Source: Thecamonas trahens ATCC 50062 (lineage: Eukaryota; Protista; Apusomonadida). From it: a stretch of DNA of 64,000 bases. The stretch spans positions 62,001-126,000 of the forward strand of contig NW_013657664.1 in assembly GCF_000142905.1 (NCBI RefSeq), read 5' to 3'. The notes under the pieces are model-generated. The model worked only from the letters and a program-made list of their open reading frames with translations. It searched no databases and had not been told where the DNA came from. Both the position numbers and the translations under genes were made by a program. How positions within the stretch are numbered: the stretch's first letter is position 1; every line of letters begins with the position of its first letter. Shown here in pieces: positions 28,598 to 48,398 of the stretch.

Positions 28598-29085
28598 TCC
28601 CGGGGTAGTGGTAGGGGGTGATGCGTGCGATGTGGGCGATGTGGGCGGTGGAACAGTTACAGAGCGACAAGGAACGAGATGAAAGACAACATACCGATGG
28701 ATATCTTCTTGAGAAGACTGCCTTGCTGAGTGTGGCATTGTTGTCGGCAGCTCGAATGCGATCATCCGCACAAGTCGGCGATCGGAAGGCAAGTGATGCC
28801 ATGCCATGCCGTGCGATGCGACGAGCTACATCACGATGCAAGGCGATGACGTAAGGGCATATGGCATTAAAATGAGGGAGAATATATGGATGTGTGTGTT
28901 TGTGTGTGTGTGTGTGTGTGGGGGGGGGTTGTGTCGATCGCCGACTCGGCCAAGTCCATTGCTTGACCATGTCCGCCACCAACGCTGCAGCACACGTCGC
29001 CCGCCTCCGTCTCAGCCTCAGCCTCAACCACAGCTACAGACAGACCTCTCTCCAGGTTTCCAAAGACGGAGAGGAGGGAGCACAT

Positions 29086-31977: not shown

Positions 31978-32017
31978 AGGCCGACTCTCGCTGCTTCGAC
32001 TCCGACCTTTAATCAAG

Positions 32018-33550
32018 CTAGCTGTCGCGAAGCAGATGCTCGGCGCCGTACCGCGCCGCAAAAGCGCGGCCCGAGGTAGGCATGGTAAGCCCGGCGGTCC
32101 CGAGATGATGAACAACGAGCTTGGCGACTTCAGGCGCCTCGACGCGAATCGCCTTCTTGAACACGGTCTCCAGCGCCACCACCGGAACCGCCACCTTTGC
32201 CGCCGCGGCGTCGGTCAGCATGGCCTCGACCGTCTCTAGCGTCTCAGACCGAACCGCTGCCAACAGCAGCGCCGCATACGATGCCGGCGACCGGGAAAAG
32301 CCCGAGTCGGCCATGAGCTTGTCGTAAAAGCCCACCTCGTGCATCTGCCCAAACGTGGCGTAGCCGAGGAGCAGCGCGTCAAAGGTCTCGGCCGTCGGTA
32401 CCACGCCCTGCGCCACAGCCTCCTTGAACGTGGCAGCCATGCGCTCAGTCTCGCCGATCCGCGCGCAAGCTTGCAGAATAACGTTGAACGCACTAATGGT
32501 GGGCGCACTGCCATCGGCTATCGCCGCCTCCAGCACGTCGCACGCAGCCTCGGCAGTCTCGGGCGAGGCACCAATGGCGTCGACCACAGGCATCAGCTCA
32601 TCGACGCTCAGCACTTCGCCGCATCCGTTCTCGTCGGCCTCGCACATCAGTCGCAGCGCCGTCGACACATCGTTCGCCTGCGCAGCGCTGTTGATGAGCG
32701 CAAGCTCCGCCTCGCGCGGCTCGTACCCGGCCTCTAGCCACAGCTCGGACCCCGCCCGGGCCAGCTCCAGCTCACCGGAAGCGACAGCTGTGTCTAGCAC
32801 GGCGGCCAAGATCCCTCGGTCGAGCCGACTGCGACAGCCGCCGGTCGTTTGGGCGGCGGCAACGAGCTCGTCTGTCCGCGCCGCGACCTTGTCGAGCGCA
32901 AAGGCGGTGCCCTCTGCATGCAAATGGGTGGTAAAGAGCGAGAGCGCCCGCCAGTACACGTTGTTGGCCACTGACGCGCCTGTCAGCTCGAGCTCGCGAA
33001 GGACAACCAGCGCCGCTGGCGGATCGGCGTGCCTGATGGCGGCGTTGAAGAGGCCAAGATAGACGGCCGAGTGCGGGAGATGGCCATCATCCAGGACGTC
33101 CTGCAGCAGACGGAGGGCCACATCCAGCCTCCCGCCCTCTGCGGTCGCCAGCAGCAGCGACTCACGAGTCCGGAGCGTCGGCTTGAGCTTGAACCGCCTC
33201 TGCATCATCTCGTAGAGAGCAAAGGCGCGCTTGACATCAAAGGGAGAGGAGCAGCATCTGAGCAGAGCGTTAAAGGTAGGCACTGTAGGAGCCAATCCTG
33301 CACGAGTCATTTCCTCCAGCAGAGCATATCCAGTAACAATGTCTCTTTCACTTGCCAGTGCGTTCATCAAACCATTGTATGTCCCCACATTGGGCACGAT
33401 GCCCTTGGCCTTCATCTCCTCTGCCAACGCCAGTGCCTTGCTCCCACTACCACGACCACGGGCCTTGGCTATGGCTGCGTTGTACCCACTCACCGAAGAC
33501 ACCAGACGCACACCGTCCTTCACACATACACCTCGACACAAGTGGAGCAT
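32018..33550 (-). CDS. Pentatricopeptide repeat protein (probably mitochondrial)
   Basis: 35-aa repeats such as GIVPNVGTYNGLMNA, GLAPTVPTFNALLRC, PTISAFNVILQAC and GVVPTAETFDALLLGY. Confidence 0.9.
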   Translation of the reverse strand: MLHLCRGVCVKDGVRLVSSVSGYNAAIAKARGRGSGSKALALAEEMKAKGIVPNVGTYNGLMNALASERDIVTGYALLEEMTRAGLAPTVPTFNALLRCCSSPFDVKRAFALYEMMQRRFKLKPTLRTRESLLLATAEGGRLDVALRLLQDVLDDGHLPHSAVYLGLFNAAIRHADPPAALVVLRELELTGASVANNVYWRALSLFTTHLHAEGTAFALDKVAARTDELVAAAQTTGGCRSRLDRGILAAVLDTAVASGELELARAGSELWLEAGYEPREAELALINSAAQANDVSTALRLMCEADENGCGEVLSVDELMPVVDAIGASPETAEAACDVLEAAIADGSAPTISAFNVILQACARIGETERMAATFKEAVAQGVVPTAETFDALLLGYATFGQMHEVGFYDKLMADSGFSRSPASYAALLLAAVRSETLETVEAMLTDAAAAKVAVPVVALETVFKKAIRVEAPEVAKLVVHHLGTAGLTMPTSGRAFAARYGAEHLLRDS

Positions 33551-34264
33551 CTTGCTGTCTCTTGAGTCGGGTGCTGTGCCCCCCCCTCCCCCCTCAAGTC
33601 GCCGTCTGCCCTGGCTGTAGCCGTAGCCCAACCGAGCGAGCGAGCCAAAGGGTGCTGACCCGTGGATCGAGCGAACTCGGCCCTCGGGGACGACAAGGCG
33701 ACCAAGCTGAGATCGCCACCACACACATGATCATGATCATGATCAAATAGCCCCCCCCCCTACATCGCCCATATCCTTCCCCTCCTCTCCTTCCTTCACT
33801 CCATCCTTCCCTTTTCTCTCAACCACATGTCCCCACTCCCCCCCCCCCCCCCTCCCTTTCCCCTCGTCACACCCGTCACACCCTTCATCACCACGTCGTC
33901 GCCTTTCCTCCAATCATCAAGCCTTCTTAAACTCTCTGATCTGACGGCTGCATCAGCACCATCTTCTCCTGAAGTAGTGACTGGTCCAGGTTGTGATTCT
34001 GGTGGAGAGACTCCTGAATTGCGAGCCAGATGGCGGCATTGGTCCCTGAGGCAGCAGAGTCTGGTGATGGTTGGGCGGAGCGGAGGGGCAATGGCCCAAT
34101 TCCACCAAATCCTCGTCCCCTCCCCTGCTGCCGCTGCCGCTGGCCTTGACTGACACCGCTCTCTGTACAGGCTCTATTGAGAGGATCAGTTGGACAAGTG
34201 ACATGTGGAGAGGAAGGGTATTGGAAAAGGTGGTAGAGGGAAGGAGGAGGAGTTGTGTGCTGCT

Positions 34265-35130
34265 ATGGACCATGGTGGCAGTGTGGGTCACCGCTTCCCT
34301 CCCCACCTCGACCACTCCCGTCTTCCGCAGGTGACAGCTGTTCGTAGTCATGGCGGACGAAGGAGTTCAAGTGGAAAGTCATCCGGTGGGCAACAACAGC
34401 TCGTAGTGGCTCTCGCTAGTAGCCATTATGGATCGAGTGCCAGTGGTAGTGGGCTGTTATTTTCCTCGGACATCGATGTGGTCGAACAGGAGGAGGAAGA
34501 TGACGATGATGATGTTCTCTCGTTCTCCTCTGATGCTGAAGATGATGATGAAGATGAGCCCGGCACCGGAGGAGGTTGCACTGGTCAAAGTCGAGACGAC
34601 GGCCGCCAGTCGACTACCGATGCGGATGCGATTGGAGATGTTTCGACAACTAGGGATACACGCGGCGGCTCCTCGTCGACGACATCGTCGTCGGCATCGT
34701 CGCGCTCCAAGTCGTCGTCACCCTCGCTCTCCGGCGGCGAATCCGAGTCTTCTGACTTGTCCGACTCGCCCAACTCGTCCGACGTTGATGTCCGCCTGCC
34801 GGCGGCGAGAGTCAGCACGCCCGATGGCACCGACGCCGCGAGCGAGACCCAGACCCAGACCCAGACCCAGACCCAGAGTGTGGCGCCCGAGTCGTCGGTC
34901 AAAGCCAAAAGTCGTCGCGGCTATTCCGCCTCCGTAGCCGCAAGTCCAAGTCCAAGTCCAAGACCAAGACCAAGACCAAGACCAAGACCAAGTCGCCTTC
35001 ACTCTCAAAGTCCAAGTTCAAATCCAAGTCTCGCACAGCGGCCAAGGTCTCCGACTCGTCGTCGGCCTCGGGGCCCGACAACCCTTCGCCCAAGTTTACG
35101 CCCAAGCCCCAGCAGGCATCATCGTCATCG

Positions 35131-35162
<32 letters not shown>

Positions 35163-36798
35163 ATCGTCGTCGTCGTCGTCGGGTCCCTCGTCCACACAGG
35201 CCACCGCTGCTGGTGCTGTAGTGCCGACCTCGACAGCTAGCAAATCCAGCCGCAGCGGGCGGTCGAAGCGGTCTTCACGCGAACGGACCGGATCCGGGAG
35301 CAAGCTGTCGCGCGGAACGTCCAAGTCCAAGCACCGGCGTTCGCGCGGGAGCAAGGCCAAGATCAAGTCCAAGGCGGCCAAGCGCAGTCGCCACAAGTCT
35401 CGGCCCGAGCCGATACAGGCCTACGAAGACTCGTACCAGGACGCCGTCGCCCGGTTTGAGCAGTACGACCAGTACGAGTCGCGGCTGCTCTCCATGGCAG
35501 CCACTGACGATCCGATCACAGCGTCAGACTCGGGCTCGGGCTCGTCGTCGACCTTCTCCTCGCTCTCGGGCTCGTCGTCGAGCTCAGGCTCGCAGCTCGC
35601 AGTACAGCCGGGCGGAGGCCGCATGGGCTCGCATCCTGTGGTGATCGAGGAAGACAAGGTGCTGGGCAAAGGCAACTTTTCCACCGTCTACCGCGGTTAC
35701 CTTGGGGATGTCGCAGTGGCCATCAAGATCCCACGCGTCCCACCGGAGCTGCAAAAGCCCGACGCCAACATGTCAGCCGCCAAGCTGCAGGCCCGTATCA
35801 AGCGGCGGAAAAAGGTCAAGTCACCCGAGTGGCTGTGGAACCAGGAGCTGTCTATGCTGCGCGCAGCGTGCGCCAGGCCACGCTCCAAGTACGTCTGCCG
35901 CCTTGTCGGCGAGGGCACGTTTGTACGGCCAGGCAGCGACGACGATGATGTGGTCAAGGGCCTCATCTTCAAGATGTATGTCGGCGGCACGCTCACCGAC
36001 CACATCAACAAGCGGAAGGGCGAGCACGGCGGCCTCCCGCAGGCCGCCTTTCTCAAGCACGCCCGCGAGATGGCCGACGGCCTCGCCTTTCTCCACGCCC
36101 GGAACATTGTCTTCCGCGACCTCAAGCCCGACAACTGCCTCATCTCGCAGCCGGTCGGTGGCCACCTGGTCCTCGCAGACTTTGGGCTGGCCCAGAATGC
36201 AGGGCTGCCGTCGCTCCACGGCATCCTCGGGACCCGAACCTACATGGCGCCCGAGGGCTTCTCCGGCAAGCGGCTTGTTCAGCCGGCGCTCGACGTCTGG
36301 TCCTTTGGTTGTTGCCTCATCCACATGTGGTGCGGCGTCCGGCCGTGGAACGACTACTCGCGCGACGAGTTCCATGAGGCCCGACACAACTTTGAGACGC
36401 CCGAGCTGCCCATCGATGACTTTGACCAGCACAAGATGATGGTCCGTGATTACCGCCAGCTCTGGCTCGAGCAAAAGGTGCGCGACCTCATGGAGCGAGC
36501 CGTCGTCTACGACGCCGACGACCGCACCCTCACTGCCGCCCTCGCCGCCCGCATCCTCCGCCACCTCATCCATGTCGTCGCCTCGGAGCGCAAAATTGCC
36601 CAGAAGAGCTCGGCCTCGTTCTCCTCGCGCTCCCGTCGCTCCACCTCCAAGCGCTCGTCCTCCCGCCGCCACACCCGCGACCGCGATCGCAGCGCCAAGC
36701 GCCGCTCGCGCCAGTCCAAGCACACACCGCCGCGCCCGACCACCGCGCCTCCCGCCTCGTCATCTTCGACAACCTCGTCGTCGTCGACGTCTTCGTAG
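34265..36798 (+). CDS. TKL-like Ser/Thr protein kinase with long Ser/acidic/basic N-terminus; frame break at about 34907-34910
   Basis: LGKGNFSTVY, VAIK, FRDLKPDN, DFG, YMAPE and DVWSFG motifs. The upstream Ser-rich ORF joins the kinase frame on adding one A. Start uncertain. Confidence 0.8.
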
Positions 36799-36915
36799 CC
36801 CTCTTTCTGCCATACTGCCATCTTCAAAGCACAGGGCTAGCCGCACCTGTCTCCACCTGACTCCACCTGACTCCATCAGACTGACTACATCGCCTCGGAG
36901 GCACGCGCCACAGCC

Positions 36916-39900
36916 ATGGATGCCGAAGAGCTTCCGCTACTCGGAGGAGAGGAACGCGGCATAGTAGGGCATGGCAGAGGGTGGCAGGAGTGTCTGTACG
37001 GTGGGCTGGAGAGCAGACTCGCCGATGACCTTGTGCTTGTTCTGGTGGCGGTCAACGTGATCTCGTTTGTGCTCTCGACAGTGGATGCCATCGACGACAA
37101 AGTGGGGACGGTGTTTGATGTCATCGAAGCTGTCTCGGTGGCCCTCTTCACCATCGAGTATGGTCTACGGATGGTGGCGATCGGCGTAGAAGACAAGTAC
37201 GCTGGTTGGTCTGGTCGCGCAAAGTGGATGGTCTCATTCTTCTCGCTCGTCGATCTCGCTGCCATCATGCCGTTCTACGTCGGCTTGGCTATCGGCGATG
37301 ATGTCGGCACCACGCAGTTTGTGCGCATCTTGCGTGTCTTTCGCATGTTTCGCGCCGAGGGCCGGCTCGTCGAGGCCTTTACTCTGCTGGATGATGTGGT
37401 GCGGGCGAACCGGGCTCTCCTGGCTACTTCGTCGTTCATGGGCGCTGCGCTATGGCTTCTTCTTGCCGGCGTGTTGTATGCAACCGAGAAGGACAACCCC
37501 GATGTGGCTGGAGAGTACGATACCTTCTTCAAGGCACTCTGGTACGCGCTGCTCAACTTGCTTGGCGAGTTCCCGATCGCTGCCGAGCTGTCTAGCGCCG
37601 GCAAGGCGGTCTCTTGCTTCACTGTCGTCTTTGCAGTCGGATTCTTCTCGATCCCAACCGGGATTATCGGCGCGGGCCTGCTTGACATGCTGACCGAGCG
37701 GCGCAATGCGCGTGCTGTCGCAGATGACAGCCGTGATGCCGCCAACGTCAGTCGAGAACATAGTCTCTGCCGTGGATGTGAAGCTTCCGCCCGTCAAGCT
37801 CACATTGCCGCCAAGGGGCTCGGTGGCCGCCTTTATCTTGTACTCGACGGTGTCGGCGTTTGGGGCAGGATCATCGAGGCCTGCATCATGGCTCTCATTG
37901 TTGTCAACGTGGTAGTGTTTTCGATCTCGACTCTACCAGACATTGGCTACGACGGTGCGTTCTTTGTGTTTGAGGCAATGACGGTCGGCCTGTTTTCGGT
38001 CGAGTACCTGCTCCGGCTGTGGACAGTGGCGTTTGGTACAGCTGGCGAGGGCGAGACGAGCTGGCAGGCTCGGGCGCGATGGGTTGTCTCGTTTGAGTCT
38101 GCCGTGGATCTAGCGTCGATTGTTCCGTTCTACGTCGACCTCGCGTTGACAGGGACGGATGTCTCGCCGACGACGCTGCTGCGAGTGCTGCGGCTAGTTA
38201 GGCTGCTCAAGGCCGACTCGTATGTCCATGTCTTTGATCTGATGGACGATGTGGTGCGGGCAAACGGGGCGATGTTGGCGACAACGGCGTGGGTGGCGCT
38301 GGTGGTGTGGATACTGGCGGCGTCGCTGATGTATGCCACCGAGCGGCACAACAGCAATCTCGAGGTTGCGTCCGAGTTTGAGTCTGTGCCCGAGGCGCTG
38401 TGGATCACCTTTCTCAACCTGACTGGCGAGTACCCGCTGGCAGACTACACTCCGTGGGGCAAGGTTGTGTCGTCAGTGGTGGCACTCGTGGCCATCGGCG
38501 TCGCCGCGCTACCGACCGGCATCTGGGCGGCCGGCTTTGAGGACGCGCTCGCCGAGGCCAAGGCGCACACGGCCGAGGACACCACCGAGTGCGAGCAGTG
38601 CATCTCGCCTGAGCTCGCAGCATCATCGGCGCGGCTGCGACTGCGAGCGGCGGCGTTTGTGCCGCTGGCGGCGCACTCGCCACAAAGGGCGGCGCAGCTA
38701 CGGAGCTCGGGACAATCTGCGGCGGCTCGAGCACCGGACTGGATACGCAGCCTGTACGCCTTTGTCTCGGGTGCAACTCGTGCCGGAGCAGCGGCCGAGC
38801 TTGTGGTGGTGGGCCTCATCTTTGTCAACACCATCACGTTTGTGCTCGGCTCGGTCGACTCGGTGGCTGCAAGCGCGACTGCGGTCAAGGTCTTTGAAGT
38901 CCTCGAGGGCTGCACGATGGCGGTGTTTGCGGTCGAGTACGCGGCGCGGGTGATAGCGGCGGGAGCAGATGCCAAGTACGCTCGGTTTGGCTGGCCGCGA
39001 CTACGGTACTGCTGCTCACTCTTCGCGCTCCTTGATCTGGCGTGCCTTGTCCCGTATGGCGTGGAGCTTGTAACGCGAACCGAGCTGAGCTCGACGGTTG
39101 TGTTCCGGCTGTTTCGGCTGATGTTCCTGCTCAAATCAGAGTCGTTTGTGAGTGTCTTTACGCTGCTTGACGATGTGTTTGTGGCCAAAGCGCCACTGCT
39201 GCTGTCGTCGGCGTTTGTGGCCGGTGTGTGCTTGATTGTCTTTGCCACACTCTTGCACTACACCGAGCAGCACAACGAGATTGTGGTGAACGATCTAAGC
39301 ATGGCGGCACGATACGAGAGCATCCCGTCGGCGCTGTGGTACACGCTGGTCCACCTGACGGGCGACTACCCGCTGTACCAGTACACGTGGTGGGGCAAGG
39401 GCGTCAACTTTGTGTCTGCGCTCACGGCGGTGGGCGTTGTGGGCATTCCGTCGGCCGCGATTGCTTCGGGCTTTGTCTCTGCGCGGGCGGCAATTGACGG
39501 TGGCGAGTTCGGCGGTGAGCGGGACGACGCACTTCCGCTGATCCCAGCAGCGGGCGACGACGCGCGGTGCCGGCAATGCCGGGTGGAGAGGGCACGCGCC
39601 ACAGGCGTCGCCGGCTGGCTCCACGCACTGTTTGTTGGCGATCTACGCGTCGGCCACTGGCCCAACTACCTCCTCAACGGGCTGATTGCGGTGAATCTTG
39701 TGGCGTTCGCGCTCGGGACCGAGCCAAGTGTCCGCGCGGGAAGCGGCGGGCGGGTGGGCGACGCGCTTGACGTGGTCGAGTGGATCTCGGTAACGGTCTT
39801 TACGATCGAGTATGTGGCACGGCTTGTAGCTGCCGACGCAGATCCTGACTGGGGCTACTCGCGGCTGCGGTACGGGTGCTCGTTCTTTGCGCTCGTTGAT

Positions 39901-40434
39901 CTTACGGCGATCGTGCCATTCTACGTGAGCGTGGCCATCGGTGACAGGACATCTGTATCGACGCTCCTTCGCGCACTGCGAGTGGTGCGGGTGCTCAAGG
40001 GTGAACACTCTGTGGAGGCGTTCACGCTGGTGGACAACGTGGTGGCGGCGACGGGCCGGGTGTTGGCGACGACTGGCTTTGCAGCCGCTCTGGTATGGAT
40101 CATCTCGGCCTCGCTGTTCTACATTGCGGAACGCTCACAGGCGTACACGGATGGCGCTTTTGACAACATGCTTCTCTCGCTCTTCTTCACCATGATCTTC
40201 CTCGGAGGCGAGTGGGCGGTGGTGGACTTTACGCCGTGGGGCGAGGCTGTGGGTGCGTTCACCATCGTGCTCGCCATCGCCATCTTTGCGGTTCCAGGCG
40301 GCATTCTCTTTGACGGCTTTGCCGACATTGCCAATAAGCGGCGTGAGCTGCGAGACCAGCTAGCTTCACGCGATCTGCTCTGCTCTGGCTGCGGCGCGCA
40401 CATCCAATCGTTCGTCCGCCATCACGTGGCCTAG
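36916..40434 (+). CDS. Four-repeat (4x6TM) voltage-gated-like cation channel built from Kv-type units, with non-GYG acidic filters
   Basis: Four repeats each with S1 (..VN..), S2 (F.IEY..R), S3 (VDL.AI.PFY), an Arg-rich S4, pore helix plus G[ED][FYW], and S6 (G..V...IP.G). Confidence 0.88.
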   Translation: MDAEELPLLGGEERGIVGHGRGWQECLYGGLESRLADDLVLVLVAVNVISFVLSTVDAIDDKVGTVFDVIEAVSVALFTIEYGLRMVAIGVEDKYAGWSGRAKWMVSFFSLVDLAAIMPFYVGLAIGDDVGTTQFVRILRVFRMFRAEGRLVEAFTLLDDVVRANRALLATSSFMGAALWLLLAGVLYATEKDNPDVAGEYDTFFKALWYALLNLLGEFPIAAELSSAGKAVSCFTVVFAVGFFSIPTGIIGAGLLDMLTERRNARAVADDSRDAANVSREHSLCRGCEASARQAHIAAKGLGGRLYLVLDGVGVWGRIIEACIMALIVVNVVVFSISTLPDIGYDGAFFVFEAMTVGLFSVEYLLRLWTVAFGTAGEGETSWQARARWVVSFESAVDLASIVPFYVDLALTGTDVSPTTLLRVLRLVRLLKADSYVHVFDLMDDVVRANGAMLATTAWVALVVWILAASLMYATERHNSNLEVASEFESVPEALWITFLNLTGEYPLADYTPWGKVVSSVVALVAIGVAALPTGIWAAGFEDALAEAKAHTAEDTTECEQCISPELAASSARLRLRAAAFVPLAAHSPQRAAQLRSSGQSAAARAPDWIRSLYAFVSGATRAGAAAELVVVGLIFVNTITFVLGSVDSVAASATAVKVFEVLEGCTMAVFAVEYAARVIAAGADAKYARFGWPRLRYCCSLFALLDLACLVPYGVELVTRTELSSTVVFRLFRLMFLLKSESFVSVFTLLDDVFVAKAPLLLSSAFVAGVCLIVFATLLHYTEQHNEIVVNDLSMAARYESIPSALWYTLVHLTGDYPLYQYTWWGKGVNFVSALTAVGVVGIPSAAIASGFVSARAAIDGGEFGGERDDALPLIPAAGDDARCRQCRVERARATGVAGWLHALFVGDLRVGHWPNYLLNGLIAVNLVAFALGTEPSVRAGSGGRVGDALDVVEWISVTVFTIEYVARLVAADADPDWGYSRLRYGCSFFALVDLTAIVPFYVSVAIGDRTSVSTLLRALRVVRVLKGEHSVEAFTLVDNVVAATGRVLATTGFAAALVWIISASLFYIAERSQAYTDGAFDNMLLSLFFTMIFLGGEWAVVDFTPWGEAVGAFTIVLAIAIFAVPGGILFDGFADIANKRRELRDQLASRDLLCSGCGAHIQSFVRHHVA

Positions 40435-40717
40435 AGCGCAGTGTCGGGCGTGGGCGAGGTGATTCCGAGTACCTGCGGAAGGCTACCTACGATGAACTTG
40501 GCAGCAAGGAGTCTAGAGCCTGGGACAACGAGCCAGGCTGATAGGATTTGTTGGGAGAGCCCAGCGAGTGTGAGCTAGCTGATTCGGCCGAGCTGGCGTG
40601 ACGAAGGCTGGTCAGCGAACAAGCGAACACGACCTGGCCAGGTTGGCGACTCGTGGCCGGGCGAGGCTACCGGGGGCACAGCACGAGTACGACACCTGAC
40701 TCTATAGACGAGAGAGT

Positions 40718-41701
40718 ATGTCTGCAGACGGCGGTTCATGCTCAGGCTCGGGGTCTACCTCGGGCGACGAGAAGGTTGTGGACCTGACGTACCAGGCGCC
40801 AGGGGTAGCGGAAGCGCTGGACGCCGAGGTGGAGGTGGTGGACGCGACAGGGAATGGGTGGACGGAGATGGAGCTGCTGAAGGGACTGGCCAAGTTGCAG
40901 ACTGTGTGCTTGCGGAACAACAGGGTGAGCAAGGTGGAATGTCTGGAGGCGGCCACAGAGCTGGAGGAGCTTGACCTGTATGGCAACTCGGTCAAGGTCA
41001 TCGAGGGTGTGGCTCACCTCTCCAAGCTCGTCATCCTCGACTTCTCGTTCAATCTCATCCGGTCGATGGCCCCGCTCGGTGTGCCCGACATTTCGTTTAC
41101 CGGCCTGCGCAAGCTGTATCTGTGTTCGAACAAGATCACCAAGATCGAGGGGCTGGAGAAGCTGACGGCCCTGGAGATGCTCGAGCTCGGATCGAACCGG
41201 CTGCGGACGATCGAAGGCCTGGAGACGCTCACAGCGCTGCGGGAGCTGTGGCTTGGGCGCAACAAGCTCGAGAAGATCACCGGGCTGGAGAACCTGACCA
41301 ATCTGGAGATCTTGGACTTGCAGTCGAACCGGCTGACCAAGCTCGAGGGGCTCGAGGCCAACACCAAGCTGACGGACCTGTACCTGGCACACAACGCGAT
41401 CGAGAGCCTCGAGGGCATTGCGCAGCTTGTGGCGCTGGAGACGTTTGACATCTCAAACAACGCGCTGTCGGCGATTCCGGCCGACGAGCTCCCGCGAGCA
41501 GCGCTGACCGAGTTCTGGATGAACCACAACACCGTGAGCGACTGGGCCGACGTCGAGGTGCTCAAGGACGCACCTCAGCTCGAGACGGTGTACTTTGAGG
41601 GCAACCCCATTGCCGAGCACCCGCGGTACCGCGCCATCATGGCCGACACGCTCCCGCAGATCAAGCAGATCGACGCGACGCTGATCCGGACGCGGATGTA
41701 A
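40718..41701 (+). CDS. PPP1R7: PP1 regulatory subunit SDS22 (LRR)
   Basis: SDS22-type LRRs (LDFSFNLIR, LELGSNRLR, LWLGRNK, LQSNRL) and LRRcap YR..IMADTLPQIKQIDAT. Confidence 0.93.
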   Translation: MSADGGSCSGSGSTSGDEKVVDLTYQAPGVAEALDAEVEVVDATGNGWTEMELLKGLAKLQTVCLRNNRVSKVECLEAATELEELDLYGNSVKVIEGVAHLSKLVILDFSFNLIRSMAPLGVPDISFTGLRKLYLCSNKITKIEGLEKLTALEMLELGSNRLRTIEGLETLTALRELWLGRNKLEKITGLENLTNLEILDLQSNRLTKLEGLEANTKLTDLYLAHNAIESLEGIAQLVALETFDISNNALSAIPADELPRAALTEFWMNHNTVSDWADVEVLKDAPQLETVYFEGNPIAEHPRYRAIMADTLPQIKQIDATLIRTRM

Positions 41702-41770
41702 ACTGCCGGCTCGACGGAGGACGCGCTGGCCAATAACATGCACGACGCGGGCCGCCTTGCGCATGCTTTC

Positions 41771-42603
41771 TCACACAATAGTGCCCAGCGAGGCAGCCTG
41801 CTGATGTGCATGCTCCTTGACCTTGGCCACAAGAACTTCGTGGATGAGAGCGGCGCCCTTCATAGCCAGCGAGACGAGAGCGTCGTAGACGTCGAGCGGG
41901 ATGCGGTCGTTGATCTTGACCAGCGAGAGCGTGGCCTCGGTGGGGAGCATGGCCAGCAGCAGCTCGGGGCCGCCACCGGACGAGTCCTCCAGATAGTTGA
42001 GATCCAGCACGTTGGCGCCGTCGATGTGGCCGGCCGAGCAGGCGACGACAAAGTCCTTGAGCGGGATGCCAGCGTCGATGAGCGCCAGAGTAGCCGCGTT
42101 GATGGCAGCAGCAACGTTGCCACCATCCGCCTGCAGAACATGGACAAAGATGTCGATTTGTGAACGCGGGAAGAGCTCTGTCAGAATGACCGGCTCAAAG
42201 GTAGCCACCAGCATCTGCGAGACCTCTGCCGACCGCTTGTCGCCCTTTGAGCTCTTCTTCCGCTCGCCTGTGGCAAAGGTAGCCATACCAAACTCTGCAC
42301 GAACAACAGCACGATCATGCTTGGCCATCGAAGCCCGCCGCACTTCCCGGGGTCCGTACACTGCCGCCACCACCTTGGTATTGCCCATCTCCACATAGGC
42401 TGATCCGTCGGCCCGCGAGAACAGATCCATCCGGGCTTGCAGCTTACGGAGCTCGTCCGGCCGCCGTCCGTCCAGCCGCAAGCCTTCTGGGGACACAAAC
42501 TCTCTCCGGGACTGTATACAAGGAAGGGGGAAGGGGAGGGTGAGTGTAGGGGGGGGGGGGGGCAAGGAGGGCATGGGGTCGGTCAAGGCTTGCGGCGTAC
42601 CAT
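41771..42603 (-). CDS. EXOSC4: Exosome subunit Rrp41; exon 1 is ATG only (42603-42601), exon 2 is 42511-41771
   Basis: EFVSPEGLRLDGRR, ADGSAY.EMGNTKV, VLQADGG and ALIDAGIP motifs. GTACGC...ACAG intron 42600-42512 gives MSRREFV. Confidence 0.95.
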
Positions 42604-42827
42604 GGTACGAAGGCGCTGGAGTGGGGTGATCCTGATCCTGATCCTGATCAAGTTTGTGTGGGCAGATTCGATGGTCGAGTGGGCGGACAGGGATAGCGGA
42701 TGAGTAATGCGTGTAAGATGGTATGTGTGCTAGAGACAGGAGAAGGTGAGTGTAGTTGGAAGGGGGTTAGATCTTTGGGTCGTGGCCTGATTGAAGCAGA
42801 GTGAGGTACAGCGGAGAGCACCGCAGT

Positions 42828-42880
42828 GGAGAGTATCGCAGCGGAGAGCACCGCAGCGCGGCGCAGCACAGCGCGGCGCA
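42828..42880. repeat. Short degenerate 15-nt tandem repeat (GCAGCGGAGAGCACC)
   Basis: Three or more units upstream of RRP41. Confidence 0.7.
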
Positions 42881-42970
42881 TGGCTGGTGGGGGCGGGACG
42901 TCTGGGTGGGCCGAGAGTGACATGCTCAATCGGGGCGGCGTGTGCTCGCGGAAGGCGAAGATTTGAGAGC

Positions 42971-44425
42971 TTACAATCTCACGACGTTGTTGATAACAAG
43001 GCAAGAATCGGAGGAGCGCTTAGAGCAGAGAGCGACGAGGTTGTGGATGGCGCCGGTGAAGATGTTGTTGGCAACCATGATCGCACCTGAAGACTCACGA
43101 GTGCGGTCGATCTGCGAGAAGCACGTGCCCGAGATGCAGTTGTTCTGCAGAAAGAGCGAGTCGGTGATCGAGACCGCGGTGGCGCCCGCGATGGTGACGG
43201 CAGGCAAACCCTTGTGATGGACGTCCCACTGGGTAAAGGTGCATCCAGAGAAAGAGACCATGCCGGAGCCGGCGACCGAGGCAATCGAGTACGATGGGCC
43301 CCAGAAGGCGGTGTTGGAGACGGTGACAGTGCCCGAGTTGGTCGGTGCGACAACGAGCTCGATCGAGGTGACCGAGACATTGGCCCATTGCGGCGAGGCG
43401 AACGAGGTGAACTCACAGGCTGCGATCTGCAGGCCCCACACGTCGACTTGCTCGATCAAGACCGACGCGTTGTACGCCATGTCAGCGCCACTCTCCTCGA
43501 GAATGCCATTGGTGGCGCCGGCTGCGGTCTCGATAAAATGGAACCCGACCGAGTAGGCAAAGGCAAAGAGGCGGGTGCAGAACTGCCAGTCAGAGCGGCC
43601 AAGGACAAATGCCCGTCCTCTAGTCAGCTGCAGCCGCATGTACTCGGGATGCTGCGAGTACCAGGGGTTAAAGTGGATGTCAATCATGCGACCGATGTCA
43701 GTCACATCGTCGACGTAGATGCCGATGAGCGACGGCTGACCGTAGACCCGGGCGATGTAGTGGCGGGCGGCGCCAACAGCCGAAATGAACTGGTACGGAT
43801 TGACGCCCTCGACATCGATGACGGCAGAGTTGACCGAGAGCGAGAGAGTGAATGGGTACGGGGTCGGCGCAGCCTTGGGGTCCTGGTCTGGATAGTAAAG
43901 GACCACGCCGCGGAGGGTGGCGTCCTGCTTGAGGGTGGCGAATGGAGTTCCCGACGCCTCGCCGCGGCCACCCACCACCAGCAGCACCGATCCATGTGTG
44001 GGCGGCAGCCCACCCTCGCCAACGTTGTGTGCTGGTGGCGCGCGATACGTGCCCTCGAGCGACACGCCGACGGGCACGGTGATCGACGAGTGGAAAGTGA
44101 ACTGGCCGGCCGGAACCCAGACGATGCCGCCACCTGCAGCCAGAGCAGCGTTGAGAGCCGCCTGGAACGGCACCGCGTTGTCAAACGAGCCATCACCGGC
44201 CCTGGCACCATGATCCAGCACGTTAGTCACGGAGTTTTGCTCCGTCGTGCCTCTGCGAGCCGGGCCAACGCTAGATCCATGCCATCGATCGTGTCGTGCC
44301 TCGAGCGCACGGGCAAGGAGGCGGCCTTGGACGCGCCGTGCTGACGACATGCCGACGGAGAGGGAGACAAGAACGAGCAAGAGAGGTAATATAGTCCGCA
44401 CAGCAATGCGCGTGGTACCAGGCAT
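42971..44425 (-). CDS. Secreted pectate-lyase-superfamily right-handed beta-helix protein (putative glycoside hydrolase)
   Basis: Signal peptide; NVLDHGARAGDG..DN..FQAALNAA..GGGIVWVPAGQF matches the Pectate_lyase_3 N-terminal motif; beta-helix-like periodicity follows. Confidence 0.8.
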   Translation of the reverse strand: MPGTTRIAVRTILPLLLVLVSLSVGMSSARRVQGRLLARALEARHDRWHGSSVGPARRGTTEQNSVTNVLDHGARAGDGSFDNAVPFQAALNAALAAGGGIVWVPAGQFTFHSSITVPVGVSLEGTYRAPPAHNVGEGGLPPTHGSVLLVVGGRGEASGTPFATLKQDATLRGVVLYYPDQDPKAAPTPYPFTLSLSVNSAVIDVEGVNPYQFISAVGAARHYIARVYGQPSLIGIYVDDVTDIGRMIDIHFNPWYSQHPEYMRLQLTRGRAFVLGRSDWQFCTRLFAFAYSVGFHFIETAAGATNGILEESGADMAYNASVLIEQVDVWGLQIAACEFTSFASPQWANVSVTSIELVVAPTNSGTVTVSNTAFWGPSYSIASVAGSGMVSFSGCTFTQWDVHHKGLPAVTIAGATAVSITDSLFLQNNCISGTCFSQIDRTRESSGAIMVANNIFTGAIHNLVALCSKRSSDSCLVINNVVRL

Positions 44426-44714
44426 GTGACTGTCGGACTGTGTCGGGTGTGCGTCGCCGTTGTTGCCCCGTTGCCAGGCGCTGCGCCACAGGTGCGCGTG
44501 CGCGTGCGCGCAAACTGGTTGCTGGTTGAATGGGGGGGTGGAGGGGGGGGGGGGGGGGGGGGGGGAGGGTGAGGGGAGTGGCGACAGGGCGAGACTATGC
44601 CACACCACTCTTTCCGAGCTTACGGAAGCAGAAAGCAGAGTGGGTGTACTGGTGCTGGTGTGGTGCACGGGTGTGGTGACTGTGTTTGTGGCTGGAAGCT
44701 GGAGCTAGAACGCG

Positions 44715-44759
44715 GCGACCTGACCGACGACCTGACCGACGACCTGACCGACGACCTGA
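44715..44759. repeat. 12-nt tandem repeat (GACCTGACCGAC) x about 4 in a divergent promoter region
   Basis: Direct inspection. Confidence 0.9.
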
Positions 44760-44816
44760 TCCACTCCTCGTCATCGACCGGGCTGCGACAACAGTAGCAA
44801 GGCACGTGATTGCATC

Positions 44817-45908
44817 ATGCAGCTGCTGCGAATCCTGAGGGGAACGCTGGCTGTGGCGGCGACCTGGGCGTTTCTGGCAGTCTCGTTTGTCATCATGCTG
44901 CCATTCTTCCTTGTGGCGCTAGTGTGCGGCGGATGGTCGATGGCACGCCGGTGGGTTGGCTATCCGGCGGGCGCGTGGGTGGTGTTTCCGGGTATGGCGG
45001 CAATCGCCGAGTGGTGGGGCGGCTCGACGCTGCGGGTCCACACGTCGTCGCCTGCGGGCGCCAAGTCCCCCGACGCCATTCTGGTGCCTGGCGAGTCTGC
45101 GCTGGTCATGGCCAATCACGTGTTTGCGCTCGACTGGTGGGCCATCATGCGGCTGGGCGTCCGTATTCGGTCGGCCGGCTGGCTTGTGTTCCTGGCCAAG
45201 GACTCGGTCAAGTACATCCCGGTGGTGGGATGGGTGGTGGCCATGGCGGGCGTGCTGCTGCGGCGGTCGTGGGACTTGGATGCGGCGCGGCTGTTTGCCG
45301 CCTTTCGCGCTGCGGGTGCCGCCGGCCAGCCGGTCTGGCTCATGTGCCACCCCGAGGGCACCCGCATGTCGCCGGCCAAACTTGCGGCGTCGCAGGCGTG
45401 GCTGGAAGCTCAAGGCCGTGACCAAATGGACCATGTACTCGCACCGCGGGTCAAGGCTGTCATTGCCGCCGTTGCCGCGCTCCACTCGCGGTTCGCGGCC
45501 ATCTACGACCTCACACTCGCGTATCCTGACGGCACGCCGTCGATCTGGAAGGTTGCTTGCTCTTGTGCGCCCGATGTCCACCTCCACGTCGACCGCATCC
45601 CGATTCCGGTGCTCTTCGAGCAGATTGCCGCCGCCGGCGGGCTAGACGCTGCCGCCGTGCCGGATCTGTTTGACGCGACCGCGTCGGGTGACGCAACGGC
45701 TGCCGCTGTCATCCTCCCGCTCATGAAAGAGTGGGTCCGCGCTCGCTGGCAGCTCAAGGAGCGGCGGCTGCGCGAGTTCCACGCCCGCGGCGGGCAGTTT
45801 GACCCCGACGAGGCGCGCGAGCTTCCGTTGCCGAGTCTTTCGCAGCATGGCGCGTTTGTGCGCGATGGACTGACACGGACATGGCCGCGGCAAGCAGTGG
45901 CTCAGTAG
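44817..45908 (+). CDS. Lysophospholipid acyltransferase (AGPAT3-5/LCLAT1 family)
   Basis: ANHVFALDW (NHxxxxD), FLAKDSVKYIPVVGW, HPEGTR, HVLAPRVK and IYDLTLAY motifs. Confidence 0.9.
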   Translation: MQLLRILRGTLAVAATWAFLAVSFVIMLPFFLVALVCGGWSMARRWVGYPAGAWVVFPGMAAIAEWWGGSTLRVHTSSPAGAKSPDAILVPGESALVMANHVFALDWWAIMRLGVRIRSAGWLVFLAKDSVKYIPVVGWVVAMAGVLLRRSWDLDAARLFAAFRAAGAAGQPVWLMCHPEGTRMSPAKLAASQAWLEAQGRDQMDHVLAPRVKAVIAAVAALHSRFAAIYDLTLAYPDGTPSIWKVACSCAPDVHLHVDRIPIPVLFEQIAAAGGLDAAAVPDLFDATASGDATAAAVILPLMKEWVRARWQLKERRLREFHARGGQFDPDEARELPLPSLSQHGAFVRDGLTRTWPRQAVAQ

Positions 45909-45932
45909 CGGTTTCCAGCTTTATCACCTCGT

Positions 45933-48142
45933 TCACTTCTTGCTGAGCGCGTCGTTGAGCAGGGCATCAAGGCGCTTGACCATAGAACGCGGGTCCTCAA
46001 GTAGGCCAGCAGAAATCATGGCGTTGTCAAAGACCTGCTGGGCAACACGCAGAGCGAGGTCGGGCTCCTCGACACGGGCAGAAACCAGCTTGGAGATGAT
46101 AGGCGACTTGGGGTTGATCTCGAGAGTGTAGCTCTCCTCCATGTCGTTGACGCCGGTCCGGGCGCCAACCATGCGGATCATCTGGCGCATGGTGGCCGAG
46201 TCGTGCTCGACAATCAGCGCCGGCGCCGAGGTCACGCGCTTGGTTGCCTTGACCTCGGACACCTTCTCGCCGAGCGAATCCTTCATCCACTCGAGCAAGC
46301 CGTCGAGGGCCTCGCCCTTGGGCGCGGCGGCAGTGTTGTCGCCGTCGTCCGCCGATGCATCGTCGTCGCCGGCCTCGGTCGCCTTAAACTCGTCGCCAAT
46401 GTCCTCAGACTCGATCGAGACCAGCTTCTTGCCGGCGTACGAGCCGAGGTGGCGCATGACAAACTCGTCGACCGGCTGGTCGAGGAGAATGACCTCGGTG
46501 CCCTTGGAGGCAAAGGCGTCCATGTAGGGCGAAGCGAGTGCGAGCTCGCGCGACGGCGCGACCACGTAGTACAGCTTATCCTGCTCCTCGGGTGTGCCCT
46601 CGAGCACCTCGTCGAGAGTCTTGTTGCCCTCGCCTGACGTGGTCGGGAAGAGCATGAGCTTGCCGAGCGCGTCCTTGTACTGATCGGTGGCGCAAATGCC
46701 CTCCTTGAGGAAGTTGCCAAACTCGCCAAACCACTTGGCGTACGCCGTCCGGTCGGCGGCCAGCTCCTCCGAAAAGTGCTTGAGAATGCGCTTGGTGAGG
46801 ATGCGGTTGAGGTTGGCGATGAGCGCGTCGTCCTGGGTAAACTCGCGCGAGAGGTTGAGCGGAAGATCCTCCGAGTCCACAACGCCCTTGACAAAGCGCA
46901 GCCACTCGGGAAGGAGCTTGGTCGGCTTGGGATCAATCAGCACCTTGCGCGAGTAGAGCTGGACGCCCGGCTCGAGGCGGCCCGAGCCAAACTTGTACTC
47001 AAAGTGGGTCTGCGGAAAGTAGAAGAGCGACTTGATGTCGACCGGCACGTCGGTCGAGAACTGCAGGCGGAAAGCCGGCTCGTCGTACGCACCCGCGATG
47101 AACTGGTAGAACTCGGTGTGCTGCTCGTCGGTCACCTTGGACTTGGGGAGCGCCCACAGCGGCTCGATGACGTTGACTCGGTCGCCGTCGACCTCGATGG
47201 GGAACGAGACAAAGTTGGAGAACTGCTTGATGATCTCCTTGATCCGGAAGCTCGAGGCAAACTCGTGCGAGTCGGCGTTGAGGTGGATGGTGATGGCGGT
47301 GCCGACCGGTGCGTCGGGCGCCTCAGTCACCGTGTACGTGCCCGACCCGTCCGAGCTCCACCGGTACCCGGTCTCGGCGCCGGCCTTGCGCGTTGTCACG
47401 CTCACGTGGTCGCCCACAATAAACGCCGAGTAAAAGCCGACACCAAACCGGCCGATGACGTTGGACTTGGCGTCGCCGGCCGCGCCCTGCCCGGCCGTCG
47501 CCATCTCGTCCACGAACGCTGCAGTTCCCGACCGGGCAATGGTCCCGAGGTTCTCCACCAGCTCGTCCTTGGTCATGCCAATGCCCGAGTCGGAAACCGT
47601 CAGCGTCTTGGCGTCCTCATCGATGGCGATGGAGATCTTGAGCTCGCGATCGACGTCAACGCCGTCGCTCACCTGCGCATACCGCATCTTCTCCAGCGCA
47701 TCCGACGCGTTCGAGACCAGCTCACGCACAAAGACCTTCTTGTCCGAGTACAGTGACTTGGCCACAATGTCTAGCAGCTTGCGGGTCTCGGCCTGGAACT
47801 CGTGCGTCTCCTCCTCCTGCGCATCGAGCGCTCCAGCCACCGATCCAAACTCGCGGGCAGCGCTGCCTGCTCCACCAGCACCTGCTCCAGACCACCGGCT
47901 GGCCATCATCGCCACGCTAGGAACTGCCAGACCCGTCACTGCCGCCACACCTGCCATCCGCACAGCACTCTGCGCGCCAGCCGTCCGAGCCAAGCTCGTC
48001 GAGGCCACACGCGCCCGCCGAGCTGTCCACCAGCCGAGCCAGCCGAGCCGCTCGAGGCAGAGCGACGAGCACCATGGATAAGCCGAGACGAGGCCCGGGC
48101 GAGGAACCGGGTAGCCATGCGGGAAGCAGCCTGGGTAAACAT
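45933..48142 (-). CDS. TRAP1: Mitochondrial Hsp90 (TRAP1/Hsp75); probable frame break in the presequence near 48014-48028
   Basis: HEFQAETRKLLDIVAKSLYSDK, RELVSNASDALEK, GRFGVGFYS and LEINP motifs, with no charged linker or MEEVD. A transit-peptide-like MFTQAASRMATRFLAR starts at 48142, one frame off; the in-frame alternative ATG is near 47957. Confidence 0.9.
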
Positions 48143-48398
48143 GCTTGTTTCGAGCCTGACGAAAAGTATGCTTCTCTATCCCCTCCCTCGCCTTACCTTG
48201 CCTGACGCCACCAGTGACCGCCTCACTCCGCCAGCCGGGATGGGATCGCCCCATGTCGCGTTGAGCCGACTGCGCGACCTTCGCGAAAAACGTCACTGAA
48301 GGCTGGGGCGCGCGACGGGGAAGGCCACGAGCGGGCTCATCGTGGGTGCAATGCTACATGAGAGCAAGTTCAATGACAGTGGAAAGGGAAAGACACGC

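What the first reader, a model, noticed from the sequence alone, without database searches (positions are those of the whole stretch)
37561..40218. Asymmetric acidic selectivity filter E-E-D-E in a potassium-channel scaffold
Seen pore loops: LLGEFP (37558-37575), LTGEYP (38419-38436), LTGDYP (39355-39372) and LGGEWA (40201-40218). The TVGYGD signature is shortened, with GYG lost. Known: CNG channels lose K+ selectivity through a similar shortening (TIGETP), and acidic EEEE/EEDD rings confer Ca2+ selectivity in Cav. Inference: a Ca2+-permeable or non-selective cation channel convergent on the Cav ring.
Basis: partly seen in the sequence, partly recalled or inferred. Interest (0 to 1): 0.82.

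Follow-up and report, generated by a model that had tools for sequence, protein, structure and literature searches.

The report
Kv-built four-domain channel, E-E-D-E pore
A Thecamonas trahens gene encodes a compact four-repeat ion channel made of potassium-channel-type repeats whose K+ filter has been replaced, in a widespread and apparently undescribed protist/algal family, by a strictly conserved Glu-Glu-Asp-Glu ring that probably makes it a Ca2+-binding, non-K+-selective cation channel.

Summary
ORF 36916-40434 (+), 1172 aa, is XP_013759166, an uncharacterised "ion transporter" of the eukaryote Thecamonas trahens. It has four Ion_trans repeats. LLGEFP, LTGEYP, LTGDYP and LGGEWA lie at the stated coordinates, one per repeat, with the acid always three residues after the predicted pore helix.

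The potassium-channel scaffold is real. Each repeat matches only Kv channels in the PDB, KCNQ2 best. The nearest single-repeat relatives are bacterial Kv-like channels with TVGYGD, and the filter here is two residues shorter. The AlphaFold model folds as a Cav/Nav-like 24-TM pseudo-tetramer, but the repeats are not orthologous to Thecamonas' own Nav/Cav-type repeats, so the architecture probably arose independently.

E-E-D-E defines the family:
- It occurs in 59 of 63 four-repeat relatives.
- Repeat III carries Asp in 90 of 92 cases and never Glu.
- One member lost all four acids together.
- Members come from Mesostigma and Chrysoparadoxa, probably also diatoms and haptophytes.

Loss of K+ selectivity and a cation-binding acidic ring are well supported inferences. 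Ca2+ permeability and side-chain orientation could not be tested here.

Two protist channel surveys omit the family, though "EEDE" is mentioned once for unnamed algal channels. The scan noted this same stretch twice before and found nothing on other DNA.

The parts
36916..40434 (+). Intact 1172-codon ORF plus stop. It is a compact four-repeat (24-TM) channel, XP_013759166 / KNC47682 'ion transporter' of Thecamonas trahens.
   Evidence: ORF list; translation; four PF00520 stretches, E 6.8e-67; 99% identical to P0001; single copy in the genome.
36991..37752 (+). Repeat I (residues 26-279): S1-S6 of a Kv-type 6TM unit.
   Evidence: HMM envelope; KCNQ2 alignment over residues 40-264, E 1.4e-19; AF2 helices.
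37822..38616 (+). Repeat II (residues 303-567).
   Evidence: HMM envelope; PDB hits are Kv only, KCNQ2 3e-16.
38740..39510 (+). Repeat III (residues 609-865).
   Evidence: HMM envelope; PDB hits are Kv/KcsA only, KCNQ2 6e-9.
39619..40395 (+). Repeat IV (residues 902-1160).
   Evidence: HMM envelope; PDB hits are Kv only, KCNQ2 1.4e-11.
37558..37575 (+). Pore loop I, LLGEFP. E218 (37567-37569) lies 3 residues after pore helix 204-215.
   Evidence: family consensus NLFGEFPL; Glu in 78/81 DI repeats.
38419..38436 (+). Pore loop II, LTGEYP. E505 (38428-38430) lies 3 residues after pore helix 491-502.
   Evidence: consensus NL(T/S)GExPL; Glu in 94/98 DII repeats.
39355..39372 (+). Pore loop III, LTGDYP. 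D817 (39364-39366) lies 3 residues after pore helix 803-814. This is the asymmetric Asp.
   Evidence: consensus HLTGD(Y/F)P; Asp in 90/92 DIII repeats, never Glu.
40201..40218 (+). Pore loop IV, LGGEWA. E1099 (40210-40212) lies 3 residues after pore helix 1085-1096.
   Evidence: G1098 and W1100 are invariant and E1099 is >=90% conserved; Glu in 75/76 DIV repeats.
37315..37365 (+). S4 of repeat I, with Arg at 137, 140, 143, 146 and 150.
   Evidence: Sequence; R137 and R140 invariant, R143 nearly invariant in the family.
38176..38211 (+). S4 of repeat II, with R423, R426, R429 and K432.
   Evidence: Sequence; R429 nearly invariant.
39094..39144 (+). S4 of repeat III, with R731, R734 and K740. 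Phe 737 stands where the family has Arg, so this S4 is charge-depleted in Thecamonas.
   Evidence: Sequence; R734 invariant and position 737 Arg in >=90% of the family.
39955..40005 (+). S4 of repeat IV, with R1019, R1022, R1025 and K1028.
   Evidence: Sequence; R1019 invariant, R1022 and R1025 nearly invariant.

Best explanation
The gene encodes one polypeptide that folds into a pseudo-tetrameric 24-TM, voltage-sensor-bearing cation channel. Its four repeats are Kv/KCNQ-type 6TM units. They carry the KCNQ-like S2-S3 linker, Arg-rich S4 segments and the KCNQ/bacterial-Kv S6 'P-x-G' hinge. In every repeat the K+ signature T-V-G-Y-G-D is replaced by a filter two residues shorter: (T/F/G)-G-(E/D)-aromatic-(P/A). 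This puts one carboxylate per repeat three residues after the pore helix: E218, E505, D817 and E1099. Shown: the architecture, the Kv ancestry, the loss of the K+ filter, and the position-specific conservation of E-E-D-E. Inferred: the four carboxylates form a single ring at the narrow part of the pore, a high-field-strength cation site. The channel therefore no longer selects K+. It conducts cations with little discrimination among monovalents, and it binds and probably passes Ca2+, as in CNG channels (G-E-T-P) and Cav (EEEE/EEDD). The shorter Asp in repeat III would tune the ring's geometry. Opening is presumably driven by depolarisation through the S4 segments of repeats I, II and IV. The four-repeat architecture arose by internal duplication of a Kv-like unit, independently of Cav/Nav, so the acidic ring is convergent.
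For: - Four Ion_trans repeats are present and no PF07885 K+-pore match. GYG-bearing relatives do match PF07885.
- PDB sequence hits are exclusively K+ channels for the whole protein and for repeats II, III and IV.
- Alignment with bacterial Kv-like channels shows the 2-residue shorter filter and the shared S6 motif.
- The AF2 model (pLDDT 70, pTM 0.68) has a pore helix, a loop and then S6 in each repeat, with the acid at helix end +3.
- The whole chain superposes on Cav2.1, Cav2.2, Cav1.2 and Nav1.7 at TM 0.60-0.65.
- E-E-D-E occurs in 59/63 four-repeat relatives. By position, Glu/Glu/Asp/Glu is kept in 337 of 347 typed repeats, with no Glu in DIII and no Asp elsewhere.
- P0016, sister of the E-E-D-E member P0010 in repeats II-IV (unresolved in repeat I), lost all four acids at once (A/Q/N/A). 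This is as expected if they act as one unit.
- On the trees, Nav/Cav-type repeats of the same genome split off at 100*. Repeats cluster by position across proteins. All 36 E-E-D-E repeats form one side of a branch at 96* in the smaller set.
- An engineered EEDE locus in Cav3.1 still gives a working Ca2+ channel (PMC2217349).
Against: - No functional data exist for any family member.
- Side-chain orientation could not be measured because model coordinates are not exposed. In the sequence alignment the acid lies opposite Tyr of GYG, whose side chain points away from the pore in K+ channels.
- An acidic ring is also compatible with Na+ selectivity (BacNav EEEE, PMC5824947).
- There is no Trp at +2 and no extra 'beacon' acid at +1 as in Cav.
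- Model confidence is moderate (pLDDT 70) and it rests on a 14-sequence alignment.
- In the larger mixture-model tree the GYG clade nests among the E-E-D-E repeats with supports of 82-91, so monophyly of the repeats is not firm.
Confidence: 0.6

Rival explanations
1. The ring makes a Na+-selective or purely monovalent-cation channel, as in BacNav or EukCat-type EEEE pores. Ca2+ would block at most, not permeate.
For: BacNav channels with an E/E/E/E filter are Na+-selective (PMC5824947). The family has aromatic residues, not acids, at +1. Some members put Lys next to or in the ring: subfamily B has K-E-H-P in DI, and P0212 is K/E/D/E.
Against: The filter context G-E-x-P resembles CNG, not T-L-E-S-W. 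A further acid is conserved five residues after the ring residue (D1104 invariant in DIV), which would attract divalents. Engineered EEDE in Cav3.1 conducts Ca2+.
Confidence: 0.2
2. The acids are structural. They would point away from the permeation path, stabilising the filter as E71 or the GYGD Asp do in K+ channels. Selectivity would be set by backbone carbonyls, and the channel could still prefer K+ or be weakly selective like HCN.
For: MAFFT and HMMER align the acid with Tyr of GYG. The scaffold is Kv-like throughout.
Against: The T-V part that builds K+ sites S3/S4 is missing; DI has F-G and DIV has G-G. The Pfam K+ pore model no longer matches. The strict Asp-versus-Glu choice by position and the all-at-once loss in P0016 fit a ring that acts jointly better than four independent braces.
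Confidence: 0.12
3. It is an ordinary, divergent member of the canonical Cav/Nav/NALCN four-domain family. On this view the Kv resemblance is noise.
For: The whole-chain fold matches Cav/Nav. L-T-G-E resembles the Cav domain II motif (my knowledge). 'EEDE' is listed among algal 4x6TM pores by Fux et al. 2018, citing Verret 2010.
Against: No Nav/Cav chain appears among the listed PDB sequence hits, even at E<=1. A Kv-like repeat HMM scores 155-289 bits on Thecamonas Kv-like genes but 8-37 bits on its canonical four-domain genes. The canonical repeats split at 100* with a branch length of 1.56. There is no Trp at +2 and no P2 helix in the model. The protein is not among the seven Thecamonas channels of the 2018 survey.
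Confidence: 0.04

Closest known systems
Cyclic-nucleotide-gated (CNG) channels, filter T-I-G-E-T-P
   Same: Both have a K+-channel-derived pore that lost GYG, a G-E-x-P pattern and one acid per subunit after the pore helix. CNG channels are non-selective with Ca2+ permeation and block (my knowledge; TIGE noted in PMC7576140).
   Different: There is no cyclic-nucleotide-binding domain. The four repeats sit in one chain. The ring is asymmetric (Asp in repeat III). The deletion appears to lie before the Gly rather than after it. The repeats are Kv/KCNQ-like, not CNBD-family.
Four-domain Cav/Nav/NALCN channels (EEEE, EEDD, DEKA, EEKE rings)
   Same: Both have 24 TM in one chain with the same overall fold (TM 0.60-0.65). 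Both place one filter residue per repeat, forming an asymmetric ring directly after the pore helix. An engineered EEDE Cav3.1 is a functional Ca2+ channel (PMC2217349).
   Different: The repeats are not orthologous. There is no T-x-E-x-W with Trp at +2 in all repeats, and no P2 helix in the model. The protein is much shorter (1172 aa) with short turrets and linkers. It is absent from the 277-sequence survey.
Kv7/KCNQ and bacterial Kv-like 6TM channels
   Same: These are the best sequence matches for every repeat. The S2-S3 linker, S4 and the S6 P-x-G hinge are shared.
   Different: Those are single-repeat tetramers with TVGYGD. Here four repeats are fused and GYG is gone.
CNGK channels and tandem Kv-like channels
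   Same: These are precedents for independent concatenation of K+-channel-type repeats: four in CNGK and two in dinoflagellate, oomycete and chlorarachniophyte Kv-like channels (PMC7576140).
   Different: Those keep a GYG-type K+ filter (in the survey TVGY/FG is kept by all but metazoan CNG, and CNGK is K+-selective), and CNGK repeats carry CNBDs. This family has neither. Two four-repeat GYG proteins turned up here (P0123, P0155), but their repeats cluster by protein inside the GYG clade, so they are separate events.

Membership tests
Voltage-gated ion channel superfamily (Pfam Ion_trans PF00520) | 6TM unit with S1-S4 voltage-sensor and S5-P-S6 pore, matching PF00520 above threshold | tested here: met
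   225.6 bits against a cut-off of 25, in four stretches.
K+-selective Kv channels | T-V-G-Y/F-G signature filter (Pfam Ion_trans_2 pore) | tested here: not met
   None of the four repeats has GYG. There is no PF07885 match, while the bacterial relatives and P0123 do match it. The filter is 2 residues shorter.
K+-selective Kv channels | Sequence kinship of the 6TM repeat with Kv channels | tested here: met
   PDB hits are Kv only, with KCNQ2 best for every repeat. Identity to bacterial Kv-like channels is 35%.
Canonical four-domain Cav/Nav/NALCN (FVCC) | Four 6TM repeats in one chain forming a pseudo-tetramer | tested here: met
   Four repeats. The AF2 model superposes on Cav/Nav chains at TM 0.60-0.65.
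Canonical four-domain Cav/Nav/NALCN (FVCC) | Repeat-by-repeat homology with Cav/Nav repeats | tested here: not met
   No Nav/Cav chain appears among the PDB sequence hits listed. HMM scores are 8-37 bits on canonical repeats against 155-289 bits on Kv-like genes. The canonical repeats form a separate group at 100*.
Canonical four-domain Cav/Nav/NALCN (FVCC) | Filter T-x-[ED]-x-W with Trp at +2 in all repeats, followed by a P2 helix (Fux et al. 2018, PMC6259924) | tested here: not met
   F, Y and Y follow the acid at +1 and Pro sits at +2 in DI-DIII. Only DIV has Trp, at +1. The model shows a loop, not a helix, between filter and S6.
CNG channels | C-terminal C-linker and cyclic-nucleotide-binding domain | tested here: not met
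   No cNMP-binding family appears in the Pfam scan. The linkers after S6 are 40-60 residues of low-confidence coil.
CNG channels | Shortened filter with G-E-x-P and a pore-lining Glu | tested here: inconclusive
   The G-[ED]-x-P pattern is present in DI-DIII. Pore-lining orientation is not measurable with these tools.
CNGK / tandem Kv-like channels | Concatenated repeats that retain GYG (plus CNBDs in CNGK) | tested here: not met
   The protein has no GYG and no CNBD.

The most novel reading that the evidence does not exclude
This would be an ancient second lineage of 24-TM channels. It arose from a Kv-type unit independently of Cav/Nav and converged on a Cav-like acidic ring. It is spread across eukaryotic supergroups: an apusomonad, the streptophyte Mesostigma, the ochrophyte Chrysoparadoxa, and probably diatoms and haptophytes. 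In protists and algae it would serve as a voltage-gated Ca2+-entry or Ca2+-release channel. That could include lineages such as pennate diatoms, which lack canonical four-domain Cav.
Probability: 0.3. Interest if true: 0.85.

Novelty: new variant of a known kind. Interest (0 to 1): 0.66.

Why it matters
Cav and Nav channels are the textbook case of a four-repeat pore whose asymmetric ring of side chains sets Ca2+ or Na+ selectivity, and they are usually treated as a single invention. This family offers a natural replicate. It has the same architecture and the same kind of ring, but it is built from a potassium-channel repeat. It shows position-specific conservation (Asp only in repeat III) and has a natural 'all neutral' member as a control.

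It could make three questions directly testable:
- which features of an acidic ring suffice for Ca2+ selectivity in a K+-channel frame;
- how concatenation permits asymmetry;
- what carries Ca2+ currents in protists and algae that lack canonical Cav.

The gene is short and has no introns (NCBI models one 24-nt in-frame one), so it is easy to express.

Tried and rejected
- NCBIfam scan: no family.
- AU test of monophyly of all E-E-D-E repeats on the 106-row mixture-model set: not finished after three 300-s runs. I replaced it with a 53-row LG+G4 tree.
- The look-up of encoding contigs for P0074 and P0165: not on record, so their organisms stay unknown.
- ESM Atlas: best hits score 0.88-0.89, under the 0.9 guide. 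The diatom and haptophyte attribution is only a lead.
- Literature: the accession numbers appear in no paper. The motif strings LTGDYP, FGEFP and similar gave no channel paper. Searches for four-repeat Kv-like channels returned only the known surveys.
- Verret et al. 2010, the source of the 'EEDE' mention, is not held. I could not check whether its EEDE channels belong to this family.
- Membership in canonical Cav/Nav was considered and rejected (see membership test).
- Measuring carboxylate orientation or pore radius in the model was not possible, because coordinates are not returned.
- Complex prediction was not used. No protein-protein claim is made and the chain exceeds its size limit.
- A bacterial origin of the window was rejected. 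The neighbours are eukaryotic (PPR, BRCT/FHA/SAP, F-box/ankyrin, HSP90) and the genome is 28.7 Mb.
Full report
WHAT IS THERE

The window is eukaryotic. Its neighbours encode PPR, BRCT/FHA/SAP, F-box/ankyrin, HSP90, LRR and kinase proteins, and the assembly is 28.7 Mb in 131 contigs. The ORF at 36916-40434 (+) is uninterrupted and 1172 codons long. It is 99% identical to XP_013759166 / KNC47682, 'ion transporter' of Thecamonas trahens ATCC 50062. The only difference is that the NCBI model removes 24 nt (36964-36987, GT...AG) near the N-terminus. Pfam finds four Ion_trans repeats and nothing else. The gene is single-copy in the genome.

CHECK OF THE OBSERVATION

The acids are E218, E505, D817 and E1099. 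G-[ED]-[FYW]-[PA] occurs only eight times in all six frames of the window, and four of those are here, one per repeat. In the AlphaFold2 model (pLDDT 70, pTM 0.68) each repeat has a pore helix: 204-215, 491-502, 803-814 and 1085-1096. Each helix is followed by a loop and then S6, and the acid is always at helix end +3.

IS THE SCAFFOLD A POTASSIUM CHANNEL?

Yes, by sequence.
- The whole protein and repeats II, III and IV searched alone hit only K+ channels in the PDB. KCNQ2 is always best, followed by Kv4, Kv1.2/2.1, Shaker and even KcsA. No Nav, Cav, TPC or NALCN chain is among the hits listed, even at E<=1.
- The KCNQ alignment covers the S2-S3 linker, S4 and the S6 P-x-G hinge.
- The nearest single-repeat proteins are bacterial Kv-like channels (PF00520 + PF07885, about 35% identity) with TVGYGD. 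Against them all four Thecamonas repeats show a two-residue gap at the filter.
- A repeat HMM scores 155-289 bits on Thecamonas' own single-repeat Kv-like genes. It scores only 8-37 bits on the genome's canonical four-domain genes. One of those genes has the D/E/E/A ring of the Thecamonas Nav2 homologue named in the literature.
- Mean identity of these repeats is 23-25% to bacterial Kv and 15-16% to the canonical repeats.

THE FOLD

The whole chain superposes on Cav2.1, Cav2.2, Cav1.2 and Nav1.7 at TM 0.60-0.65 with 12-14% identity. AlphaFold therefore arranges the four repeats as a 24-TM pseudo-tetramer.

THE FAMILY

Word-based and exhaustive searches found compact four-repeat relatives of about 1100-1900 aa at about 30% identity. 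There are 177 clusters at E<=1e-30. Named members come from Chrysoparadoxa australica and Mesostigma viride. Atlas look-alike clusters are mostly diatom and haptophyte, which is a lead only.

E-E-D-E is found in 59 of 63 four-repeat sequences. In repeats typed by position among the 50%-identity representatives the counts are:
- DI: Glu in 78 of 81
- DII: Glu in 94 of 98
- DIII: Asp in 90 of 92, never Glu
- DIV: Glu in 75 of 76

The exceptions are informative.
- P0016 has A/Q/N/A. It is sister of the E-E-D-E member P0010 in the clades of repeats II-IV (unresolved in repeat I), so it lost all four acids together.
- P0212 has K/E/D/E.
- P0123 and P0155 are four-repeat proteins with GYG in every repeat. 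Their repeats cluster by protein inside the GYG clade, so they are separate concatenations.

ORIGIN

- In a 106-row tree of single repeats, the canonical Thecamonas repeats split off at 100* on a branch of length 1.56.
- The GYG channels form a clade at 96*.
- The E-E-D-E repeats cluster by position across proteins (10 label changes against 70 when shuffled). The four-repeat order therefore predates the family's radiation.
- In a 53-row tree all 36 E-E-D-E repeats are one side of a branch at 96*.
- In the larger tree the GYG clade nests among the E-E-D-E repeats with supports of 82-91, and the AU test did not finish. Monophyly of the repeats is therefore likely but not firm.

All four repeats share the same shortened filter. 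The simplest history is one deletion in a single-repeat ancestor, then two rounds of duplication, then Glu-to-Asp (or the reverse) in repeat III. The architecture and the ring would then be convergent with Cav/Nav.

HOW IT LIKELY WORKS

Shown: K+ sites cannot be built as in Kv. The Thr-Val part is gone (F-G in DI, G-G in DIV), and the Pfam K+ pore model no longer matches. A carboxylate sits at the same place in every repeat and is fixed by selection.

Inferred:
- The four carboxylates form a ring at the narrow part of the pore. The channel would be non-selective among monovalent cations, and would bind and probably pass Ca2+, as in CNG channels (G-E-T-P) and Cav.
- A further acid five residues downstream (D1104, invariant) may add an outer negative ring.
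- S4 carries 4-5 basic residues in repeats I, II and IV and three in repeat III, so voltage gating is likely.
- An engineered EEDE locus in Cav3.1 still conducts Ca2+ with altered gating (PMC2217349). This shows that such a ring can work, though in a different frame.

Weak points:
- Orientation of the side chains could not be measured.
- The alignment puts the acid opposite Tyr of GYG.
- EEEE pores can be Na+-selective (PMC5824947).

WHAT IS KNOWN

- The 2018 survey of 277 four-domain channels lists seven Thecamonas sequences. None of their S4 strings match this protein, and none of the family's S4 or pore strings occur in that survey's supplement.
[quoted passage not shown] Its main text does not name Thecamonas.
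- A diatom Ca2+-channel survey and the 2025 NALCN study do not describe the family.
- One caveat: Fux et al. 2018 mention 'EEDE' among algal 4x6TM pores, citing Verret et al. 2010. I could not read that paper.
- The scan itself noted this same stretch twice before, as an independent 24-TM origin and for CxxC motifs. It holds nothing similar on other DNA.

VERDICT

This is a new variant of a known kind: a four-repeat channel built from Kv-type repeats with a conserved asymmetric acidic ring.

Noticed in passing
window 37768-40392 (CxxC at residues 284-287, 558-561, 884-887, 1156-1159); alignment A2: Each Thecamonas repeat is followed by a CxxC motif about 15-40 residues after S6. Bacterial single-repeat Kv-like relatives end with C-P-H-C-G at the same place. 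The other 13 eukaryotic family members aligned do not have it. It may be an ancestral tail kept only here, or it may have been re-acquired.
   Followed up: partly
window 36916-36945: The N-terminus E-E-L-P-L-L fits an acidic di-leucine signal. An acid...P-L-[LI] motif recurs near the N-terminus in at least 8 of 29 family members with a Met start. This hints at an endomembrane location.
   Followed up: partly
window 36964-36987: The NCBI gene model removes these 24 nt (GT...AG, in frame, 8 codons) as an intron. The ORF is open with or without them.
   Followed up: partly
L012:1186-2814 (G000:C78): This is the nearest paralogue, a single-repeat Kv-like protein of 542 aa. Its filter L-T-G-Q-G-I-D-Y is non-canonical, with no GYG. 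It branches outside the rest of the GYG clade.
   Followed up: partly
proteins P0099, P0100, P0106, P0121, P0125: These are proteins of about 600 aa starting with Met that hold only DI-DII-type or only DIII-DIV-type repeats with the matching filter residues. They are either true half-channels (two-repeat stage or split genes) or fragments from short contigs.
   Followed up: no
proteins P0156, P0165, P0174, P0201, P0205 and others: A second subfamily is longer (1100-1900 aa), with filters L-x-K-E-H-P, H-G-E-W-P-W, F-G-D-Y-P-E and T-G-E-W-A-N. It still has E-E-D-E, but with a Lys next to the repeat I Glu.
   Followed up: no
proteins P0123 and P0155: These are four-repeat proteins with GYG in all repeats. 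P0123 also has four PF07885 matches. Their repeats cluster by protein, so they are further independent concatenations of K+-channel units.
   Followed up: partly
L001, L002, L007, L008 (G000:C12:280625-284502): This canonical four-domain channel of the same genome has filter residues D/E/E/A (T-M-D-E-W, I-G-E-W, T-F-E-G-W, T-A-S-G-W). It looks like the published Thecamonas Nav2-type channel.
   Followed up: partly
window 39094-39144: S4 of repeat III has Phe 737 where at least 90% of the family has Arg, so this sensor is charge-depleted in Thecamonas specifically.
   Followed up: partly
window 28894-48296: The neighbours are unrelated housekeeping or signalling genes: a BRCT/FHA/SAP protein, a PPR protein, a protein kinase directly upstream (35221-36798), an LRR protein downstream (40718-41701), RNase PH, a beta-helix protein, an acyltransferase and HSP90. 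There is no channel-related cluster.
   Followed up: no
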